DNA of 64,000 bases from Haplodiscus bocki (taxonomy: Eukaryota), in assembly GCA_965655095.1 (NCBI GenBank), contig OZ296650.1, forward strand, positions 1,426,001 to 1,490,000, read 5' to 3'. Below the pieces are notes generated by a model, which was given only the letters and a program-made list of their open reading frames with translations, ran no database searches and was not told the origin of the DNA. Below are positions 13,095-22,790 of the stretch, piece after piece. Both the position numbers and the translations under genes were made by a program. The stretch's first letter is position 1; every line of letters begins with the position of its first letter.

Positions 13095-15115
13095 CAACAG
13101 GCCGGGCGGCAGAAAAATCGCTGGCTGATGGAACCACAATCAAAATACAGAAAACAAAAAAATATACCGAAAAAACCGAAATTCAGACGTATTCCCGAAA
13201 ATTCTTCTCGGCGAAATCTAGTCTCGAACCCGTATCTATGGCTTGAGGACCTTTTGTTCTTCCTTCTAGACAACTGGGGCTTTCTGGAGTACCAACCACT
13301 TTGTGTTTTGAAAATTTCGTCGATTCCAGAAGTCTTGAAAAAACAAAAACCACTGTGATAGTCGGGCACTTTTTTTCCAAAAAGCGCCGATTAAAAATGA
13401 GCGATCCAGGAGTAAAATTGCGAATCTCTATCTTCTACATTGATCCATTTTTGGAAACAAAAACTATTATAATCTACGTAAAATTATACGTAAATACGAA
13501 ACTTTTCTTGAAACTTCTTTATACGTTCGGTAGATATTTAGATATTCAGTGGTCCCATTTCTTTATCACTGCACTGTAATAAAGGCAATCAAAGTCAAAT
13601 GCGAACATGTAGATTCTGTTTTGTAAAAGCAAACTAGAAAAAGAGATATTCTTTCGATTCGAATTGACATTAATAGAACAATTCCATGCAGATCTTGCAG
13701 AACTATAGACTCGTAACTGTAGAAACCTAAAAAAAATCGAAACGCCACCATTTTTTCCAAAAACACTGACCTTCAATCTCTCCGAAGTTGCCGATGTTTT
13801 AATGGGGAAGTGTTCACTATGAGTGGAAAAACACCGGAAGATTCTCTACTTTTATGCAATGGCACACCAGTTTTCTCCAATGTGATTTTCATTTTGTCCC
13901 AGCAGCGAAATTTACTACTTTTGAGCAAGCATTCGAATAAACAGTTAGTTTTGTATTGGAACCCCGAAATTCAATAAAATCTGATCAAAAAGTTAACATA
14001 ATTGTTTTATCTACACGCAATTTTTGACACAATTATGTCTTAGATTTTCAAAAAAAACTTTTTTTCCGCATTTTCATGTGAATATCTACGCAATAAAATT
14101 ACACCCCTGTTAATCATCCACTGCATCCTATTTACATGTCCAACAATAATTATAATTGTAATAATCACAAGGCAAACGGCCAACACCAGGATATTTTCCG
14201 CCCTTTAACTTTGTTAAAAACGCGCTTTTCGTAAAAGTTAGGAAATCACATTGGCTAATTTTCCACAATTTTATAAAATTTCCTATGAAAAAGTAAATGG
14301 TACGATGCTCCGATTGTTGATGTGATTTTGAAAATGACAGGTTTTACGGGGATAATAATCAAAACCAAATATTATATCATGATTTGTGCTATCATTTGAT
14401 ATTTGGAACTGCAAATGAGCTCCCTAGTTAAACTCGCATGAGTTTTGTATGCCACCTAACATTTTCAGTATTATTTTACACGTTGAATCGATTTAATCGA
14501 CTCTTTTGATGAATTTTGTAGGATTTGGCGGGGTTTTGTAACTTAGTTTCACAAAGTGATAGACAAAATGGCGGTAATTTCAAGACAACATTTTGTAAAA
14601 TTCTGAAAGTTACGCGTAAACGTTGTCTGCGCTGTCTGTCGCCATCTACGCATTTGCTGCAAATCACAAATGTGATGACTAAAAGGAATTTTTTGAAGCT
14701 AACAAACAGGAAGAATTATTTTTGACTTGTTTTCCAGTTTAGCCATCACAAGACACGCGGCTATCACAGCGATATTTTCCGCCCTCCAACTTTGATACAA
14801 TTGCTTTCCCAAACAATTTTCTTTCTATATGCCTTTTATTTCAAATTGGCTAATTTCTGCAAATGTTAAAATTTCGGATTTTTTCAAAAAGCCTAAATTT
14901 TGGTCACACAGAGACATTTTGAATAAAATGACTATTTTATCTGCATTCTACATTAAACTTGTTTTTTATGAAACCCTACTATTCATTCGCATTCTACGGC
15001 TAGTTTGCCATAATGTGGTCATAAATTTTCAATCTCATAATATCTCATGAAAGCAAGTAGGCGTGAAAAAAACGTGATACATGATTAAAAGATGGCGGAA
15101 AATAATGTGAGCGCT
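13095..15115. mobile_element. Cluster of HINE-family ends and fragments
   Basis: ACAAG..CGGC..ATATTTTCCGCC termini at about 14166-14202 and 14747-14783; related GGCGG(C)AG/AAAA motifs at about 13104 and 15094; same end motif as 586-625, 54551 and 56119. Confidence 0.4.
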
Positions 15116-17199
15116 AGGGGAGAATAACGGAATTTAAATTAAACGGTGGATTTCATTCGCAGTGCACGACGAAAAACGTCAAATTTTGATTGAACTTGCA
15201 TTTACGTGTACATGCAATTTTTTAGCCCTTATATGCAATTGCTGCATCTTACATCCGTGCAGCATTTGCGTGTCAACAAAACAAAGTGCTTTGAAAGTGC
15301 TTTTCGAACATTCATCTCAAAGCGCCCAAACTGAGCGTCTCACAAAATGAGCAGATGTGACGAATTTTGAAGGTATTTTGAAAGCAAAACGCTTTTCAAT
15401 AGCACATCTACAGTGACACATCTACTCTACAAAACAGTTTACGCTGCCAAACCGCAAAGTTTGTGAAATGAAAACACAATTTTGTGCTTTTAAGGAAGCA
15501 GCAAAGAACATAACGAAGACGCTGGACAAATTCTACGCAAGGAACACATTGTCAGGAAGACCATCCAAAATGGTTTTGAAGCACTTAGAGAAACATCCCT
15601 TCCACCTTCCGGACCCGGAAGCACAAGAATAATCCGATCTCATCTCATCTAATCTGATTTGAGCTGATCTCATTCGTCGCAGCACACAGTTCACACAAAG
15701 TGACATTGATAATTTCGGTCAATGACTTTTGCGTAGTTACCTGTGGCTTCCTTCATTGGTGCCGATAACTTCTTTTGTTGTCAAATTTCCCTTTGAAGTA
15801 GTACAAATTTCCCTATGAAGTAGTCGAACAATATCCTTTAAATGTTTGTGCATGGGTAGCTGATGCATTATACATGTATATTACTATAGCCAGTGCATTA
15901 TTTTTACGCCAACCACAAAGACCAAACTAACTCATTCAATATACTTCATCCATGCAACATAATTTGTATATGCCAATAGATACAGTAAAGACAAGACAAG
16001 GAAAAGTTGATATAATTTTCCAAAGTAGCAATTCTGTATTTTCAATACAAAATATGATATATGAACGAATGGCCAGCCCTATAGCGCGAATTTTAACGCC
16101 CATGTTATTTTACGCCAAATGTGTAACAAGAAAATTAAACATTTTTTTACCACTAACAGTTTTGTCCATCCGAGCAGTATTCAGAAGTTGCCGAGACATA
16201 TTTACCCCGGCATTGGCTGCATCCCCTTCACCAGAAAGCTTCGAGGACTCGGTACGTTTTTTGAAAGCGTCGAAGCACTGATTCACATCTATAACATTCA
16301 CAACTCATCAAAGATTCATTTGGTCGAAGTTTCCAGGTTCAATTCAGAACGAACAACTATTAAATTCATTCCGACCAATGATTGATCCCACGTAAATACT
16401 TTTTTCATATTGATAAAAATAAACCGGGAACGCCCCAAATCAGCGCATTCCCCAAGTCTCAAAATGTCGGGGGAAGGAGGGATTTGACGTTTTGGAAATA
16501 TTTGGTTTCCGGGAAAAATCACTGGACGAAAAAAATCGTTTTCCTCATTTTTTATCAAAGCGCCCCAAATTTCCGCAAGTTGACCGTGCAGTGATCTTAC
16601 AATGCCAAACAAATTGGCACCCTTCAGCTCTGGCTTTCAAAAAGCTGGTATACAAAAGTGTGGATATCACATTATTTCGCAAAAATTGTGGTCCTATAGT
16701 ACAGAAAAAACAAAGTTACGTTCGATTTCGTAATTACAACGTCTCTCGTACTGTATACAAACAAGCACTAGGGAAGCATTTTCTAGCAAGCAACCACTGA
16801 GCGCGAACAAATCAAAAGATAATCAAACCTAACGGTTCACACGCTTCGAAAAAAAAGTCAATGTAATAGACGGGCTTGCTTTCACGCGCCGCTTGAAAGC
16901 GGAATTACTCGATGATGTCATTTTAAATAGAGTAACTAGTAGTGTGAGTTAAAATACGGCTTTCCCGGCGGGGGACTCCGGAGGGTTTGGCACCCCGGAG
17001 TCTTCAACAGTTGACACGGAGCACGACGAGGGGAATCCGGATGGCATGGCACCTCGGAGGCCCAAAAGCAAACCCTTCCTGATATCACAATAAGGGACTC
17101 CGGAGGTCGCGGCGCTTAGGAGGCCTCTACTGGTTAGCAGAACTTCGTCGCCCCCTTTGGCCTGTTGAAGTTGAGCTTGAGCAAATAAGATGTGCATGA

Positions 17200-19683
17200 C
17201 TTCAGGAGGTAAAAAAAACCCTCATCAAGTTGACAAATTGCCAACAACGCATCAACTTCCTTTCATCGCGTCTACAAAACGACGCGATACCGAAGTTCCT
17301 GAGCTTCAGGGTTCCGGACAACGGTCGTAGTGACACATCACGGTGCACAACTTTCAGCGGCGCCTCTTCAGAACAGAAATACACTCTGCTTCAGAGTCAT
17401 TGAAAGGAATAAATTCAGATCGAGAGAGAACGTGAGAAAGCTTCCTGCAAAATTCTTGCCGTCATTGATCAGACACCGCCGGATCATAACCAAAACAGTG
17501 CGTAAAGAAAACAAAGAAAGGCATAAAAGGAAGCTGAAATCACTTGCACGACGGCAAAGCAAACCTTTCATTAGCGTCGGTGACACTGTCAAGGTGTTGG
17601 ATGACCTGAAAAATGCCCCAAAAAAGCTGGAATACCTGTTTCTGGGACCGACGCATCCTGTGCTTGACAAGTTTAACGAAATTCAGTTTCTTTCGCAAGT
17701 CAACTCTCCTGCACAACCTGGAAAGCAGTGGAACTCCGAAATAGAAATGGCATGAGGTAAACTCACTGGCACTATGGTACAAAGAGATGAAAAAGCAATG
17801 TTAGAACCATACGTTTAACAGGGTCAAAAAGTTCCCCACTAAAGAGAAAACAGAGGCAGTTCGGTTCAATAAAGGAATCGGATTCTGCAAAACGAAAGAC
17901 CAACCGACAGAAACTCAGACACCTTCGAAGTGCAACAGTTCGAGGAAGTACTAAAAACCGGGAGGAAGAACAACATTCTGGCCATTGAGGGGGAAAAGAG
18001 TGAAAGTCTCAAATGCCTGCTCGAAAACCAAGAAATTGACGATGATCTCAAAAACCTCAAGTGCACTGGAACACAACCAGCCCACTGGTACAGCCTTTCA
18101 AAGGTGCACAAAGCCGATACCCCCTGTGACCTGTTTTGTCTCTTTCAGGAAGTGGGTACGACATGTTGAACAAGTGGCTGACGAAGTTCTTCGACAATGT
18201 TCCTGAGGCCAAAATTGAAACATCAACTGTGAAAATGAAATCCGTTCTCAGCCTAACATCTCTTGAAGAAAATGAGATAGTCCTCTCCGTGGATGTAAAG
18301 GGCTTTTACATCAATGTGCCCGTGATGGACGCCATCGAGCTGGCATGCGAAGCTCTCTTCACATCAGGAAGCCCGCCACCACTGTCAAGTAACTTTCAAG
18401 TCACTCATGGAACTGGCAGTCACAAATGTTTGTTTGGTTCATGAGTAGTTCCTAGTGGTACATCCAGAGAGATGGCGTTGCAATGGGAGCATCTCGAGCT
18501 GTGATAGGTGGCGAACAGCTGGCTGGATGAGAGCATAGCCGCTGAGGAAACGCAGCCAGGCCCACCAAAAAAAGAACGAAAACAAACCCTTCCTCTGTGT
18601 AAAGTTTGAGAAGAATGTATCCCGAGCAGTGTACTCAATCCCTTGCGATGACTGTAAGCGTTGGTTCCACGGAGGATGTGCCGGCTTGTCACTCAAGGAG
18701 ACTGAAAATATGCTTAACCCATCGAATTGGCTTTGAGGGTGTGTACAGGTAAGAAAAAATCTCCTCCCAAATGAAGGCCAGTCTTTGGACGGTATGTGGA
18801 CCACATGCTGAGATCCATGAAAGAGTCGGGAATAGACAGAATGCTCCTGCATAGCAATACCCAACCCCAAATCGTGAAGTGACGAAAGAAACTCTGTTAG
18901 ACGACAGCATGATGTTCCCCGATATCAAGCTAGAGCTGAAGGAAGGGAAAATCAAAAAAAATCTTGGTACCAGAAGCCCACCGACAAATGATCGATCCTT
19001 CAATTCAAAGCTCTAGCCCGCATGGTCTACAAGAAGAACATCATAGAGGGTCATAAAGAGGATCTTCAACTCTACGTCAACCTGGGAGAAATTTGTTGAA
19101 GGGATGGACTCCGCGATGAACATCTGGGAGGCGAATCAGTATTCCCACAGTTCTACCAAGCGTTGATGAGAACAAGATTGGACAAGAGCCTGAATGGTAA
19201 AGCTAAGCCTTTTTCAGAGCAATCAAAGCCCACCAATACCATGAGCACCATGCTTATTCTGCAGTACAGGGGCAACAAGAACGACCACTTCTCGGAGAAA
19301 CTCCGGAAAACGGTCCAATGTCTTCGTGATCTTCACCACTCCAAAGATAAGAAGTGCCCTGCCCTCCCTCAAAATGCCTGTCCCACAAATGTTGCTGAGT
19401 AACGATGTGTACCAAATTAATTGTCCCTGATGTCAGTCCAGCTAAGTTGGGCAAACCACCCGCCACTTGACAAAGAGAATTTAGCACGCTTGGCCGACTA
19501 GCCACGTGGGGGACCCTGAAATCCTGCAACCAGAAGATGAAAGATGCCGAAATTGAAGTCATCGACAGAAGTAACAACCCGATCAAGCTGCTCCCTCTAG
19601 AAACCCTGCACATATCGAGTAGAGCGCCCTCAAAAAATCAAAAAGAGGAGTACAGGGCTCGCGAATTCACCTTCAGAGTGTAA
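17200..19683 (+). pseudogene. PLE RT-(PHD)-GIY-YIG polyprotein with multiple frameshifts and stops
   Basis: INFLSSRLQNDAIPKFL; KVHKADTP; LSVDVKGFYINVPV (motif A); WYIQRDGVAMGAS (B', 18456); FGRYVDH (C, 18784-18804, D to H); WYQKPTD; VYQINCP*CQSS*VGQTTRHLTKRI*H (GIY-YIG, 19407); LETLHI...NQKEEYRAREFT; stop 19681-19683. Confidence 0.9.
18596..18742 (+). other. PHD-finger (C4HC3) coding segment inside the PLE RT
   Basis: One frame reads CVKFEKNVSRAVYSIPCDDCKRWFHGGCAGLSLKETENMLNPSNWL*GC; Cys2 (now TTT) and Cys7 (now TGA) are single-base changes from TGT. Confidence 0.8.
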
Positions 19684-19741
19684 CAAATCATTACCAGCTT
19701 TGTGTCTTCATAAATCTATAAACATAGCTTTGTTTATATCA

Positions 19742-19744
<3 letters not shown>

Positions 19745-19781
<37 letters not shown>
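19745..19781. repeat. (CT)n microsatellite, about 18 units
   Basis: Directly visible. Confidence 0.95.
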
Positions 19782-19784
<3 letters not shown>

Positions 19785-19850
19785 CCTGAAAGTTGCTATG
19801 AATCTAGATAAGATTTCAGATTTTCATTTTTGTTTTGTCATACCTTTTCT

Positions 19851-19893
19851 AGATTCTGATGATGGTCTATAGGACCGAAAACGTTCAAAATAA
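19851..19893 (+). ncRNA. Minimal type-I hammerhead ribozyme motif in the PLE 3' region
   Basis: CTGATGA-t-GGTC-tatag-GACC-GAAA, palindromic AACGTT stem III, then UC cleavage site; stem I is weak. Confidence 0.7.
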
Positions 19894-22339
19894 ACTTCAA
19901 AAATCACAGGTTTTCAAACGGTTTCCTATTGTTAACAGTAACAACCCTGACAGAAAGAACTTTAATCATCAACTGGACCACTCTGGATAACACAGTGCTG
20001 AATCAACAAGTACAACGCAGACTGTCACACGGAATGGAGTGTACGATTGATTATGATGGGCACTACTTGAATGATGAAATTTGCTTGCAATCGCCTGATA
20101 TTGAAAGTCCCGCGTATATACGATTCGGCGCATACAGAGAAAAGCGTTACAAAGCACACAAGTAATAATTGTAAAAAAGAAGAAGATGATCAGTCGATAC
20201 CAATTAGATGGGAAAACTGATTTAACCTGCTCGAAACAAATATCCGAATCCTAGAAAATCAAGATTTGTCTTGTCGGCAAGTACACACCAAAAATTAAGG
20301 CGTGAGATTCCAAAGTTACGTACTAGATCTTTATAGAACAATACTGAATAAGGATGTAATCGAGATGCTGGAAAAAAACATGTCACCTCGATTCCCCTGG
20401 TTGTACAAAAAGTCAAAGATTTATCGGCTGGTTAAAGTTATCAGAGAAGCCATGGTCTGTTGTTAGCACATCATGCATTGATACTCACAGGAATATATAC
20501 ACTACCGACGATTCCGGGGGCACGTTGTAAGTGGACTTGAGGGTAGAAATCTTCACTACCGAATGATGAAAATTCACAGCTGGAAAGCTGAAATCATTTT
20601 CTTCCCTTACTTTAAAATAATGCGACTACGAGGCCTTTTGATACTTTTTGTTACGCTATGCAATTCATCAAACAAAACTGCAACTTTTTTATAACTTACG
20701 AGAGAAGCACAATCACAACGCCGTTTTATTCTGTTTCAACCTCAACAAACATAACTTGCAACGTTTCATTTTTACAAGTCCTGGTGATGACTGTTTTCAA
20801 AAAGTCACAGTAACATCACTGATACATTTCTATTCTGTGACACGTTATGATAACCAGCGATTGCATACTTGTAAGTGATTCGCTTTCACTGGAAGATAAT
20901 GTCGAGTACTATCAACCTTTGCAGAAAAACACCGGCTTTATATGACCGATACCTGTATCGGAAACTATTAGCTTCAGAAGTTCGCGATCAGAGAACTTGT
21001 TTATTCAAGAACACCAAAGTTTACCGATTAGCTTTCTAGGAAAACTGAAGCAGGCACAGCAGGGACTAATCCGCAAAATTATTACTCCCATTTATTGCTC
21101 GGAAATTCAAGCTCTCCTATCCATCATCTATTTATCAGCTTAATATTTGAATCCAGAAGTTGTAGTAGATATGGAGGGATTCAAACGAAAGATTCATGAT
21201 TTCCTTATCAAAGAGATATAAGCGTTCGGGCCGATTTATCAGTAATCTGCTTTTGCAGTTTTCCTTTGATGAAATACTAAATATAAAAGATGGCACGGAA
21301 AACTTCCACTGGGTCTCCAAAGACAGATTGATTAGACTGGAACTCTGGATAGAACGATCATTTCTTCCTATAACACTTTTTCACGAAAAAGGAAATCCGC
21401 TTTTAAAACGCAATTTTCCACGCAAACGTTGAAAAGTGTGCATTGCTATCCACCGATTTTGTTTCAAAAACAGACTTGGAATGAGTCGGATGACCAAAAA
21501 TCTACAACTTTCCTCATTATATCAATGGAATCTCTTACAATCACATCCACCCGGAGCGTTATTTCGAAAACTTCTCAAAAAAAAAGTATTGCAAAACAAT
21601 AGGCTACTCAAAAAATTACATTCCGATGGCCTAGGAGTGCACAACAACCATTAGCAAACAAGTGTAGACTTCACCAAAGAGGAAGTGGTGGAACCCGCAA
21701 ATCATAACGTGCTCAGAGGACTGTAAACGAGCTGACGACGGAAGAATTCGATTGTCTTAATGAGAGCATTCAGGCTGTCAATGATAAATGAAACTATAGT
21801 GCCCATTACAACAAAGAAATTGAATGGAAGAACGGAAAATCTCATCACTTGGACTAAATGTTGGGAAAAAACAACCCACTGAAAAAGATGGCCCATGGCC
21901 AGCCAAAAAAAAAACTTTTCACGAGTACACTAAATTCGAAAAAGTCAGAGAAGGTGTCATGTTTCCTTCATCGAGAAAAAAAATAAAAGTCTTCAATTTT
22001 TTCATCGGCAAATACATCTAACTGAATTTAACTCTCTCGAGTCAACTGATGCTTTTATTAGGTACATATTCTGCACATGTGATAAATCAAGATAAGATTT
22101 TGAAACTTCCGTTCTTTCAAACTAATTTGGTTCGGAACAGAAGATGAAGCAGTTGATTCAGCTGATAACACACCAATTGACAGCATTGTTTTCGACAATG
22201 GTCAAACTGATATAACATTAGAAATACGCTAACCCAATAACAGTATCTTGTTTCGAGGTTCTGTCCTTCACTCAAGCTCTCCTGGCTTTCATCAGTGTGA
22301 TAGCTTGGAATTAACCCCTTGTTTAGATTTTCAGACAAA

Positions 22340-22790
22340 TCAAAAAAAAATTAAAAAAACTCGTGGGAAGTAATGTATTAGGAGCAGGAATTTGAAAAAT
22401 TTGCAGTAGGAGGAGGTTATCAAAAATGATCACCAATATGTTAACCAATTCATCTCATCGACTCAAGTGATTGCGCATGATTCATATCAACACAAATCAT
22501 ATTGTTTTATTTCAAATCTTCATCATACGTTCAACAAATTGATATTTTTGGTTGGCCAATGAACAATACAGAGTTCATCAGAGATCAATACAAGAAGCTA
22601 ATTCAGAACCATACGGTCAGTTAGACATCAACTCCGATCTTACAACAAGCGACGCAATAAAATTTTGCTCCAATATATTGAGTCATTCCCCAACAACATC
22701 CCATTGTCGTTCATCATTAGCCAAAGAGACGCCATTGACAAGTGACCACCAAAATGTTGCATATAGTGAAGAAAGCCTGAACGTGACGGA
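22340..22790 (+). pseudogene. A32-like packaging ATPase, C-terminal half (element A)
   Basis: EQEFEKFAVGGGYQ (AGRH region), INTNHIVLF..VQQIDIFG, EANSEPYGQLDINSDLTTSDAIKFCSNI. Confidence 0.7.

What the first reader, a model, noticed from the sequence alone, without database searches (positions are those of the whole stretch)
18456..18804. Penelope-like reverse transcriptase with a PHD finger inserted inside the catalytic palm
Seen: about 100 codons separate RT motif B' (QRDGVAMGAS) from motif C (RYVD[D>H]). They include a C4HC3 pattern, C-x2-(C)-x12-CDDC-KRWF-H-GG-C-...-W-L-(C)-G-C, flanked by P/K/E-rich linkers; two ligands are single-base decayed like the rest of the element. Established: PLE RTs usually have roughly 30-35 residues here, and PHD fingers often read histone H3 tails; in retroelements they are familiar from CR1-type ORF1 rather than inside RT. 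Inference: a PLE lineage whose RT carries its own chromatin reader, possibly steering GIY-YIG-primed insertion to a given chromatin state. This copy sits at the edge of a dense TE cluster. I do not know of a description of this architecture.
Basis: partly seen in the sequence, partly recalled or inferred. Interest (0 to 1): 0.85.

Follow-up and report, generated by a model that had tools for sequence, protein, structure and literature searches.

The report
PHD finger inside Penelope reverse transcriptase
A dead copy of a Penelope-type jumping gene carries a genuine Pygopus-like PHD zinc finger in a loop in the middle of its reverse transcriptase; a whole lineage of such elements in marine animals keeps this layout under selection, probably to dock the enzyme onto histone H3 tails.

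Summary
[quoted passage not shown] About 108 codons lie between RT motif B' (18456) and motif C (18790). They hold a C4HC3 finger (18596-18742) that passes Pfam PHD above its cut-off even in this decayed state.

The insert is not specific to this copy:
- Every copy examined, from at least three families in this genome, has it at the same site.
- A younger family reads RT-B' / PHD / RT-C / GIY-YIG in one open frame of up to 775 aa.
- Sixteen carriers from other assemblies, including a RefSeq protein of the acoel Symsagittifera roscoffensis, form one clade (100/100 support) nested among PLEs with the usual 30-49-residue loop.
- dN/dS in the PHD core is about 0.1.

By sequence and by fold the finger is closest to Pygopus PHDs, which read H3K4me. 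The pocket-dividing Trp and the pocket floor are conserved.

Reading of histone tails, and any steering of insertion, remain inference.

PHD inserts in PLE proteins are already published for algal Chlamys elements, but at other sites, so this is a new variant of a known kind. The scan had already noted this feature on other pieces of this genome.

The parts
16964..19921 (+). Whole decayed Penelope-like element copy, about 2.96 kb, full length for its family
   Evidence: blastn against 27 other copies: four copies start their similarity exactly at 16964, and similarity ends at about 19920. tblastn with the intact relative L027 ORF covers 17462-19680 in shifting frames.
17865..17885 (+). PLE 'DKG' motif, decayed here to F-N-K-G-I-G-F
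   Evidence: Translation. Intact relatives read FDKGxGF at this column.
18286..18321 (+). RT motif A (SVDVKGFYINVP)
   Evidence: Translation; aligned to an invariant block in A1.
18456..18531 (+). RT motif B' (WYIQRDGVAMGAS...), continuing after a frameshift as VANSWLDE
   Evidence: 94% identical to the intact relative over 17 aa.
18532..18595 (+). N-side linker of the insert (P/K/E/T-rich)
   Evidence: Translation. This stretch varies in length and sequence among relatives.
18596..18742 (+). PHD finger core, C4HC3 with a C-x-C last pair. Ligand 2 is decayed to TTT (18605-18607) and ligand 7 to TGA (18734-18736).
   Evidence: Pfam PF00628 E=2.5e-6, 27.8 bits against a cut-off of 24. Other copies read Cys at both decayed places. 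Eight ligand columns are conserved in relatives.
18743..18783 (+). C-side linker of the insert
   Evidence: Translation; variable among relatives.
18784..18804 (+). RT motif C (FGRYVDH; the second catalytic Asp is decayed to His)
19407..19683 (+). C-terminal GIY-YIG endonuclease remnant, with C-x2-C between GIY and YIG, running to the stop codon at 19681-19683
   Evidence: Translation. Intact relatives: Pfam GIY-YIG in 6 of 14 members, best E=1e-4; alignment.
19745..19781 (+). (CT)18 microsatellite inside the element's 3' UTR. It is not the insertion target.
   Evidence: TRF. Other copies have only a short ctctctc here, and the homology continues beyond it.
19851..19907 (+). Hammerhead-ribozyme-like core (agatt-CUGAUGA-hairpin-GAAA-...). 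Its 3' part is decayed in this copy.
   Evidence: A patch 90-95% identical between the old and young families, whose remaining DNA is 65-72% identical. RNAalifold gives a three-way junction. Rfam finds no hammerhead.

Best explanation
This is a dead copy of a canonical Penelope-like retrotransposon: RT plus a C-terminal GIY-YIG nuclease, of Penelope/Poseidon type by its motifs. It belongs to a lineage that once acquired a Pygopus-type PHD zinc finger in the surface loop between the motif B' helix and the motif C hairpin of the RT.

Shown:
- The domain is real, in frame, gained once, and kept under purifying selection across a deep clade of elements in marine animals.
- It is held on two variable linkers that the model places with low confidence.
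- The predicted RT fold around it is intact.

Inferred:
- The finger binds the N-terminal tail of histone H3. It would use the conserved pocket-dividing Trp, the Val and small-residue floor, and the beta-strand that pairs with H3 R2-K4.
- This would tether the RT-EN ribonucleoprotein to nucleosomes during target-primed reverse transcription.
- The result would be either a bias of insertion towards a chromatin state or simply better access to chromatin.
- The preferred methylation state is open, because the Asp lip of Pygo is not kept and the second aromatic wall is present in only about 40% of members.
For: Domain identity:
- Pfam PHD is above its cut-off on the decayed window piece and is hit by 10 of 14 homologues. 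Precomputed PHD_Pygo hits are on record for most homologues.
- The best solved relatives are Pygo1/2 PHDs: single sequence E=7.6e-7, profile E=1.5e-12.
- The AF2 model of the 60-aa insert has pLDDT 85. All 50 top Foldseek hits are PHD fingers, Pygo first, with TM 0.59-0.65.

In frame and a feature of the lineage:
- L027:597-2921 is one 775-aa frame reading RT / PHD / RT / GIY-YIG. L022 and L025 are likewise.
- The insert is at the same site in every old-family copy that reaches it (L002-L015) and in a third family, L029.
- 15 of 107 top PLE relatives have the insert; 91 have the short loop.

Single gain: with the insert columns removed, the 16 carriers form one clade with UFBoot/SH-aLRT 100/100, nested in short-loop PLEs (quick tree).

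Selection: dN/dS is 0.10-0.14 over the 49 PHD-core codons (dS about 0.4) and 0.26-0.34 over the whole B'-to-C segment. The eight ligand columns are conserved while the linkers vary.

Placement: in the AF2 model of full-length P0009 (pLDDT 93.8, pTM 0.86), helix 462-480 is followed by a linker (pLDDT 67), the PHD at 494-541 (82-92), a second linker (72) and the hairpin at 553-565. The best fold match for the whole protein is TERT.

H3-pocket residues: the Pygo1 residues named in PMC2726290 were mapped onto 23 inserts. V350 is V in 21 of 23, A356 is S/A/G in 23 of 23, I357 is I/V/F in 21 of 23, and Y341 is Y/F in 10 of 23. The W366-equivalent Trp was required by the pattern used. Independently of that, it is invariant in alignment A3 and at least 90% conserved in A1.
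Against: - There is no direct evidence of histone binding. The only test available, a PHD plus H3-tail complex prediction, gave no verdict.
- Pygo's D352 lip and E360 are not conserved.
- Pygo needs its BCL9 HD1 cofactor for good affinity (PMC2726290), and nothing equivalent is known here.
- The last ligand pair is C-x-C rather than C-x2-C, so the second zinc site may be built differently.
- No data on insertion sites or chromatin were available, so 'steering' is untested.
- No RNA evidence of expression was found.
- The dN/dS value rests on 49 codons and essentially one divergence, since the five pairs share it.
Confidence: 0.55

Rival explanations
1. The PHD is functional but does not read histones. 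It would bind something else: the N-terminus of a host or element protein, the element's own RNA or the target DNA, or a second RT-EN molecule. In that case it would serve RNP assembly or nuclear import or retention rather than choice of chromatin state.
For: Conservation and selection show function but not the ligand. Among the hits in the fold and sequence searches are PHDs with non-histone ligands: PHF2 with the VRK1 N-terminal peptide, and MLL1 PHD3 with Cyp33. Pygo's D352 and E360 are not conserved, and the aromatic wall Y341 is present in only 10 of 23 inserts. The nearest relatives in the same genome are ORF1 PHDs of LINEs, whose ligand is also unknown.
Against: The residues that are conserved are the ones Pygo uses for the H3 tail: the Trp divider, the V350 and A356 floor, and the beta-3 strand. 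All the closest solved relatives read H3K4me.
Confidence: 0.3
2. The insert is only a structural zinc module tolerated in a permissive loop. On this reading it was kept because removing it would misfold the RT, and it has no ligand of its own.
For: The B'-C loop tolerates other insertions: P0016, in the sister group, has an unrelated 225-residue low-complexity insert at the same place. The linkers are flexible and variable.
Against: dN/dS of about 0.1 holds over the whole core, not only at the ligands. Surface pocket residues (W, V, small residue, I) are conserved as well as the zinc ligands. A domain on low-confidence linkers is unlikely to be needed for folding of the palm.
Confidence: 0.1
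3. The feature is an artefact: an insertion specific to this copy, a nested fragment of another element or gene, a chimeric assembly, or an intron that is spliced out.
For: The window copy itself is broken by frameshifts and a stop codon, so on its own it could not decide.
Against: The same insert is at the same site in all copies examined from three families of this genome. It is in one open frame in several copies. It is in independent assemblies and a RefSeq protein. Contigs from other runs span B'-to-PHD and PHD-to-C, and no joint skips the insert.
Confidence: 0.02

Closest known systems
Chlamys Penelope-like elements of Chlamydomonas with PHD insertions (Craig et al. 2021, PMC8557442)
   Same: A PLE whose single ORF carries a PHD finger inserted inside a catalytic domain. 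The authors likewise suggest a chromatin role and cite CR1 and Rehavkus.
   Different: Chlamys elements have an N-terminal GIY-YIG without the CCHH finger, occur in the green lineage, and lack canonical hammerheads. Their PHD sits between RT2a and RT3(A), or between the H and E residues of the EN. Here the EN is C-terminal with CCHH, the hosts are marine animals, and the PHD sits between RT4(B') and RT5(C). The gain is therefore independent.
Canonical C-terminal EN+ PLEs of the Penelope/Poseidon type
   Same: DKG motif, RT motifs, a thumb region, no Cys-rich linker before the EN, GIY-YIG with C-x2-C between GIY and YIG followed by H...H, 5' truncation and tandem copies, and a hammerhead-like 3' motif.
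   Different: The B'-to-C loop is 97-125 residues and holds a folded PHD, against 30-49 residues in 91 of 107 relatives.
Pygopus PHD finger (hPygo1/2, fly Pygo; PDB 2vpe, 2xb1, 3zpv)
   Same: Best sequence and fold match. The C2-to-C3 loop is the same length (12) in 19 of 23 inserts. The equivalents of W366, V350, A356 and I357 are conserved, and a C-terminal helix follows the second strand.
   Different: There is no EVND or D352 lip, and E360 is variable. The last pair is C-x-C. No BCL9 HD1 partner is known. The finger is embedded in an enzyme loop instead of lying at a protein's C-terminus.
PHD finger at the N-terminus of ORF1 of CR1/L2-type non-LTR retrotransposons (Kapitonov & Jurka 2003, as cited in PMC8557442)
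   Same: These are the nearest PHD relatives inside this genome: 41-51% identity and 49-54 bits, against 32 bits for Pygo2. A retroelement-to-retroelement origin is plausible.
   Different: They lie in a separate ORF1 protein, not inside the RT. They end in the canonical W-x-C-x2-C.
Chromatin readers fused to other mobile-element enzymes: the chromovirus integrase chromodomain and the RAG2 PHD (from my own knowledge, not tested here)
   Same: The concept is the same: a histone-mark reader on the integration machinery that biases where DNA is cut or joined.
   Different: Different enzymes (integrase, recombinase) and terminal fusions rather than an insertion in an RT palm loop.

Membership tests
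Penelope-like elements, canonical C-terminal EN+ | RT with PLE signature motifs (DKG, QxDGxAMG in B', RYVDD in C) and TERT as the nearest structural relative | tested here: met
   Alignments. The window copy has these motifs in decayed form. The Foldseek top hit for the full model is Tribolium TERT, 6usr and 3du5.
Penelope-like elements, canonical C-terminal EN+ | C-terminal GIY-YIG endonuclease with a CCHH finger whose two Cys lie between GIY and YIG | tested here: met
   VVYxIxCxGCxxxYVGQT...EH...H is seen in the ORFs. Pfam GIY-YIG matches 6 of 14 members at E<=0.01, best 1e-4, though L027 scores below the curated cut-off. The window remnant is at 19407-19683.
Penelope-like elements, canonical C-terminal EN+ | Hammerhead ribozyme motif in the terminal repeat | tested here: inconclusive
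   A CUGAUGA-hairpin-GAAA core with possible helices I and III is 90-95% conserved between families. Rfam reports no hammerhead at E<=0.1 on six loci, nor at E<=10 on the window's 3' region (19780-19960).
Penelope/Poseidon clade, as opposed to Neptune, Nematis and Hydra | No CX2-5CxxC linker upstream of GIY-YIG, with CCHH present | tested here: met
   There is no Cys in the roughly 60 residues before GIY in L027, L022 and P0001-P0011. The criterion is taken from PMC8557442.
Penelope/Poseidon clade, as opposed to Neptune, Nematis and Hydra | Placement with named reference elements in an RT phylogeny | not tested
PHD finger (PF00628) | Cys4-His-Cys3 ligand pattern with canonical spacing | tested here: met
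   The pattern is C-x2-C-x10-12-C-x2-C-x4-H-x2-C-x14-24-C-x1-2-C/H in 23 distinct inserts. The deviation is that the last pair is C-x-C in 19 of 23.
PHD finger (PF00628) | Profile match above the curated threshold | tested here: met
   27.8 bits against a cut-off of 24 on the window piece. 10 of 14 homologues match, best E=7.6e-8.
PHD finger (PF00628) | PHD fold | tested here: met
   AF2 model with pLDDT 85, holding a two-stranded sheet and a C-terminal helix. All 50 top Foldseek PDB hits are PHD fingers, with TM up to 0.66.
PHD finger (PF00628) | Binds two zinc ions | not testable with these tools
   Needs metal analysis of the expressed domain.
Histone H3K4me-reading PHD fingers (Pygo type) | Conserved K4-pocket and H3-strand residues (Pygo1 W366, Y341, D352, V350, A356, I357, E360) | tested here: inconclusive
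   W, V, the small residue and I are conserved. Y/F is present in 10 of 23, D352 in 2 of 23, and an acidic residue at E360 in 8 of 23.
Histone H3K4me-reading PHD fingers (Pygo type) | Binds the H3 N-terminal tail | not testable with these tools
   The complex prediction gave no verdict. Peptide binding assays are needed.
Chlamys-type PHD-bearing PLEs | N-terminal GIY-YIG lacking CCHH, with the PHD between RT2a and RT3(A) or inside the EN | tested here: not met
   Here the EN is C-terminal with CCHH, and the PHD lies between B' and C (definition).

The most novel reading that the evidence does not exclude
An animal PLE lineage independently captured a retroelement-type PHD, one related to the LINE ORF1 PHD, into the B'-C loop of its RT. 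This would make a reverse transcriptase with a built-in histone H3 tail reader that directs target-primed reverse transcription to nucleosomes of a particular H3K4 state. It would also be a second, convergent case of PLEs recruiting PHD fingers, suggesting that docking onto chromatin is a recurrent need of GIY-YIG/TPRT elements.
Probability: 0.4. Interest if true: 0.7.

Novelty: new variant of a known kind. Interest (0 to 1): 0.55.

Why it matters
Very little is known about how Penelope-like elements choose where to insert, and no PLE RT has a solved structure.

A conserved reader-type domain placed in an RT palm loop gives a concrete, testable handle. Peptide binding, Trp mutants and insertion-site maps can be compared with the PHD-less sister lineage.

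Together with the algal Chlamys elements and the CR1 ORF1 PHDs, it points to repeated recruitment of PHD fingers by retroelements that use target-primed reverse transcription.

It also marks the B'-C loop as a permissive site for engineering RTs.

For annotation, gene models such as XP_063724333.1 ('uncharacterized protein') are PLE ORFs.

Tried and rejected
- **Complex prediction.** The PHD (P0009 486-548) with this genome's own H3 tail (L047, residues 2-36) and two Zn scored 0.00: no verdict, neither for nor against.
- **Rfam search for a hammerhead.** Nothing at E<=0.1 on six loci, and only chance hits at E<=10 on 19780-19960. The motif rests on sequence and RNAalifold only.
- **Microsatellite as target.** I first took the (CT)n at 19745-19781 for the insertion target. 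Comparison of copies shows it is internal to the 3' UTR.
- **Sequencing runs.** No listed holder is on record as RNA. The laid contigs show presence and no skipping joint, but say nothing on expression.
- **Geometry.** The position of the PHD relative to the active site could not be measured, because model coordinates are not exposed. I used only secondary structure and pLDDT.
- **Consensus.** Natural intact relatives served instead.
- **Literature.** Three searches (Penelope-like + PHD; Penelope + plant homeodomain + reverse transcriptase; PHD + GIY-YIG + retrotransposon) returned only Craig et al. 2021 as relevant. The shrimp ASDE paper and the 2026 retrozyme preprint mention 'PhD' only in funding lines. 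Repbase and Dfam could not be searched.
- **Window ORFs.** Pfam on the three longest window ORFs found nothing.
Full report
**Observation.**
Translating window 17150-19720 in three frames shows a decayed Penelope-like element (PLE) ORF.
- Motif B' (WYIQRDGVAMGAS) is at 18456-18494 and motif C (FGRYVDH) at 18784-18804.
- Between them, read across at least three frameshifts, lie about 108 codons.
- These codons include C-V-K-F, x12, CDDC, KRWF, H, GG, C, x17, W-L-stop-G-C at 18596-18742.
- The uninterrupted 65-aa piece 18539-18733 matches Pfam PHD (PF00628) at E=2.5e-6 and 27.8 bits, above the curated 24 bits.
- Other copies of the same family read C-G-K-C and W-H-C-G-C at the two odd places.

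**The element in the window.**
blastn against 27 other copies puts the element at 16964-19921. Four copies begin their similarity exactly at 16964, and others are 5'-truncated. Its parts, in order, are:
- a decayed DKG motif (17865-17885);
- RT motifs A, B' and C;
- a GIY-YIG remnant (19407-19457) with the ORF stop at 19681-19683;
- a 3' UTR holding a (CT)18 run (19745-19781). Other copies have only a short ctctctc there, so the run is internal and not the target site;
- a patch (19846-19888) that is 90-95% identical between two families whose remaining DNA is 65-72% identical. It reads agatt-CUGAUGA-hairpin-GAAA and folds into a three-way junction in RNAalifold, like a hammerhead. Rfam does not report it.

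**Other copies in the same genome.**
The genome has 1.5 Gb.
- About 14 copies are 72-80% identical to 18136-19000, across the insert.
- A younger family (L021-L028, about 90% identical to each other at protein level) has long open frames. L027:597-2921 is one 775-aa frame that reads through motif B', the finger (CGGC, x12, CSTC, RSWFH, RK, then Y where a Cys ligand should be), motif C (RYVDD) and the GIY-YIG. L022 (568 aa) and L025 (525 aa) have all eight ligands.
- A third, more distant family (L029) has the insert too.
- A search with the 126-aa B'-to-C segment gives 83 scored matches out of 704 candidates.

**Outside this genome.**
- Twelve proteins from ENA assemblies match residues 330-520 of the L027 ORF. 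Eleven cover the insert at 40-54% identity and have all or most ligands. The twelfth (P0012, 29% identical overall) is a PLE with the short loop.
- Their precomputed Pfam hits include PHD_Pygo (PF27108) and PHD.
- An exhaustive search finds 16,948 relatives. Of the 107 retrieved proteins (the top 150 representatives plus P0001-P0012) that have both motifs, 91 have 30-49 residues from the Q of B' to the R of RYVDD. Fifteen have 97-125 residues with the Cys-rich insert. One (P0016) has an unrelated 225-residue insert at the same site.
- I cut the insert out and built a tree. The 16 carriers form one clade with ultrafast bootstrap and SH-aLRT of 100/100. All 200 bootstrap trees need a single change. 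The clade is nested inside successive short-loop groups (the quick tree of 87 rows agrees).
- Sources are Tara Oceans marine metagenomes and long-read assemblies.
- One cluster member is RefSeq XP_063724333.1, an 'uncharacterized protein' of the acoel Symsagittifera roscoffensis, which has the insert.
- Coral and coral-reef metagenome runs hold part of the young family, so the host is probably a reef animal. I did not identify it.

**What the insert is.**
- The consensus is C-G-x-C, x12, C-x2-C, x2-W-x-H, x2-C, about 17 residues, W-x-C-G-C. The linkers on both sides vary in length and sequence.
- The last pair is C-x-C in 19 of 23 distinct inserts and C-x2-C/H in four.
- The best solved relatives by sequence are Pygopus PHD fingers: E=7.6e-7 with one sequence and E=1.5e-12 with a profile. 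Next come Alfin-like, BPTF, DIDO, PHF2/8, TAF3 and MLL PHDs, which are mostly H3K4me readers.
- An AF2 model of the 60-aa insert has pLDDT 85. All 50 top Foldseek hits in the PDB are PHD fingers, Pygo1/2 first, with TM 0.59-0.65. E-values are weak, as expected for 60 residues.
- I took the histone-contact residues of hPygo1 from Fiedler et al. 2008 (PMC2726290) and mapped them onto 23 distinct inserts:

| hPygo1 residue | Role in Pygo | In the 23 PLE inserts |
|---|---|---|
| V350 | pocket floor | V in 21 |
| A356 | pocket floor | S, A or G in 23 |
| I357 | T3 pocket | I, V or F in 21 |
| Y341 | aromatic wall | Y or F in 10 |
| D352 | lip that favours K4me2 | D in 2 |
| E360 | contacts R2 and A1 | D in 8 |

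- The pocket divider W366 was fixed to W by the pattern used for this table. Independently, it is invariant in alignment A3 and at least 90% conserved in A1.

**Selection.**
I compared five young-family copies with a relative from another assembly (L045, which encodes P0025). dN/dS is 0.10-0.14 over the 49 PHD-core codons (dN about 0.05, dS about 0.4). It is 0.26-0.34 over the whole 119-codon B'-to-C segment. The five pairs share one divergence and the stretch is short. Even so, the finger is at least as constrained as the RT around it.

**Placement in the enzyme.**
- A full-length AF2 model of P0009 (847 aa, 95-row alignment) has pLDDT 93.8 and pTM 0.86.
- The B' helices (462-473 and 476-480) are followed by a linker (block 481-490, pLDDT 67).
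- Then come the PHD (494-541, pLDDT 82-92, with strands 507-509 and 516-518 and helix 526-535), a second linker (pLDDT 72) and the motif C hairpin (553-565).
- The best fold match of the whole protein is Tribolium TERT, in line with the known sister relation of PLE RTs and TERT (PMC8557442).
- So 'inside the palm' is true of the sequence. Structurally the finger hangs on a loop. That this loop faces away from the active site is my inference from general RT architecture; I could not measure it.

**Possible origin.**
Inside this genome the nearest relatives of the insert outside PLEs are N-terminal PHD fingers of ORF1 in APE+RT non-LTR elements. L033 has an ORF1 with PHD followed by an ORF2 with Exo_endo_phos_2 and RVT_1. 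L038 has a PHD-bearing ORF1 upstream of an RVT_1 ORF, and L032, L037, L040 and L041 carry closely similar PHD fingers. They share 41-51% identity and 49-54 bits with the PLE finger, against about 32 bits for Pygo2. Capture from another retroelement is plausible but not shown.

**Mechanism.**
- Shown: the insert is a folded PHD-type module, gained once, kept in frame and under purifying selection in otherwise complete RT-EN ORFs.
- Inferred: it binds the H3 N-terminal tail and tethers the RT-EN RNP to nucleosomes during target-primed reverse transcription. This would bias or ease insertion into chromatin.
- The methylation state it prefers is open.
- Rivals are a non-histone ligand (0.3), a purely structural module (0.1) and an artefact (0.02, refuted).

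**Comparison with what is known.**
Craig et al. 2021 (PMC8557442) report PHD insertions in five Chlamys PLE families of Chlamydomonas. These lie between RT2a and RT3(A), or between the H and E residues of the EN. The authors cite CR1 ORF1 and Rehavkus PHDs. Their main text has no mention of RT5 and only two of RT4, neither about an insert between RT4(B) and RT5(C). Three literature searches found nothing else relevant. The present case differs in clade (canonical C-terminal EN with CCHH, in animals), in site (the B'-C loop) and in PHD subtype (Pygo-like, with a C-x-C end). I rate it a new variant of a known kind. Repbase and Dfam could not be checked.

**Earlier notes of this scan.**
After my own analysis I found seven notes describing the same feature on other pieces of this genome. 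One follow-up (s1-364293) reached the same reading: a Pygopus-like PHD, conserved under selection in marine invertebrates. My results agree with it, and they were obtained independently of it.

**Limits.**
- The complex prediction gave no verdict.
- The laid runs are contigs and mostly DNA. They span B'-to-PHD and PHD-to-C with no joint that skips the insert, but they say nothing about expression.

Noticed in passing
window 19851-19907; also L021-L028 about 130-190 bp after the ORF stop: A hammerhead-ribozyme-like core (agatt-CUGAUGA-GGUC..GACC-GAAA-hairpin-UC|GAUCU) that is 90-95% identical between two PLE families otherwise 65-72% identical. Rfam does not detect it.
   Followed up: partly
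window 19745-19781: The (CT)18 run is an expansion of a short ctctctc motif inside the element's 3' UTR. It is not a microsatellite target site.
   Followed up: yes
L032-L041 (for example L033:2386-3258:- ORF1 and L033:3-2372:- ORF2): At least two families of repeats carrying an N-terminal PHD finger 41-51% identical to the PLE insert. In L033 and L038 the PHD-bearing ORF1 is followed by a non-LTR RT ORF. They are a possible donor of the domain.
   Followed up: partly
L016-L020 = G000:C2:136755638-136762995: A tandem array, with a period of about 1760 bp, of 3' PLE fragments (part of the PHD, the end of the RT, an internally deleted EN and the UTR). It looks like a PLE-derived satellite or retrozyme-like array.
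   Followed up: no
P0016 (sister group of the PHD clade): An unrelated 225-residue low-complexity insert at the same B'-to-C loop. Either the loop is a permissive hot spot or an intron has been translated through.
   Followed up: no
P0189 = XP_063724333.1, Symsagittifera roscoffensis: A RefSeq 'uncharacterized protein' that is a PLE ORF with the PHD insert. Its motif C reads RYVED. The N-terminal part of the gene model looks scrambled: RT motif A occurs twice.
   Followed up: partly
P0011/P0209/P0211 and P0026/P0170/P0175: Sub-lineages in which the last zinc pair is C-D-R-H or the canonical C-T-H-C instead of C-G-C.
   Followed up: no
G000:C4:15.57-16.31 Mb and contig C37 (L047-L076): A very large tandem array of histone genes with a repeat unit of about 4.6 kb and more than 150 H3 copies scored. 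H3 is L047:1486-1896(-).
   Followed up: no
window 14480-15075: Two short interspersed repeats of about 175-220 bp with hundreds of copies at 73-79% identity (881 first-look candidates). The downstream flank 19950-22450 has only a few old low-copy matches.
   Followed up: no
L002/L006 = G000:C9:32915955-32918368: Two old-family PLE copies in head-to-tail tandem, the arrangement that gives PLEs their pseudo-LTRs.
   Followed up: no
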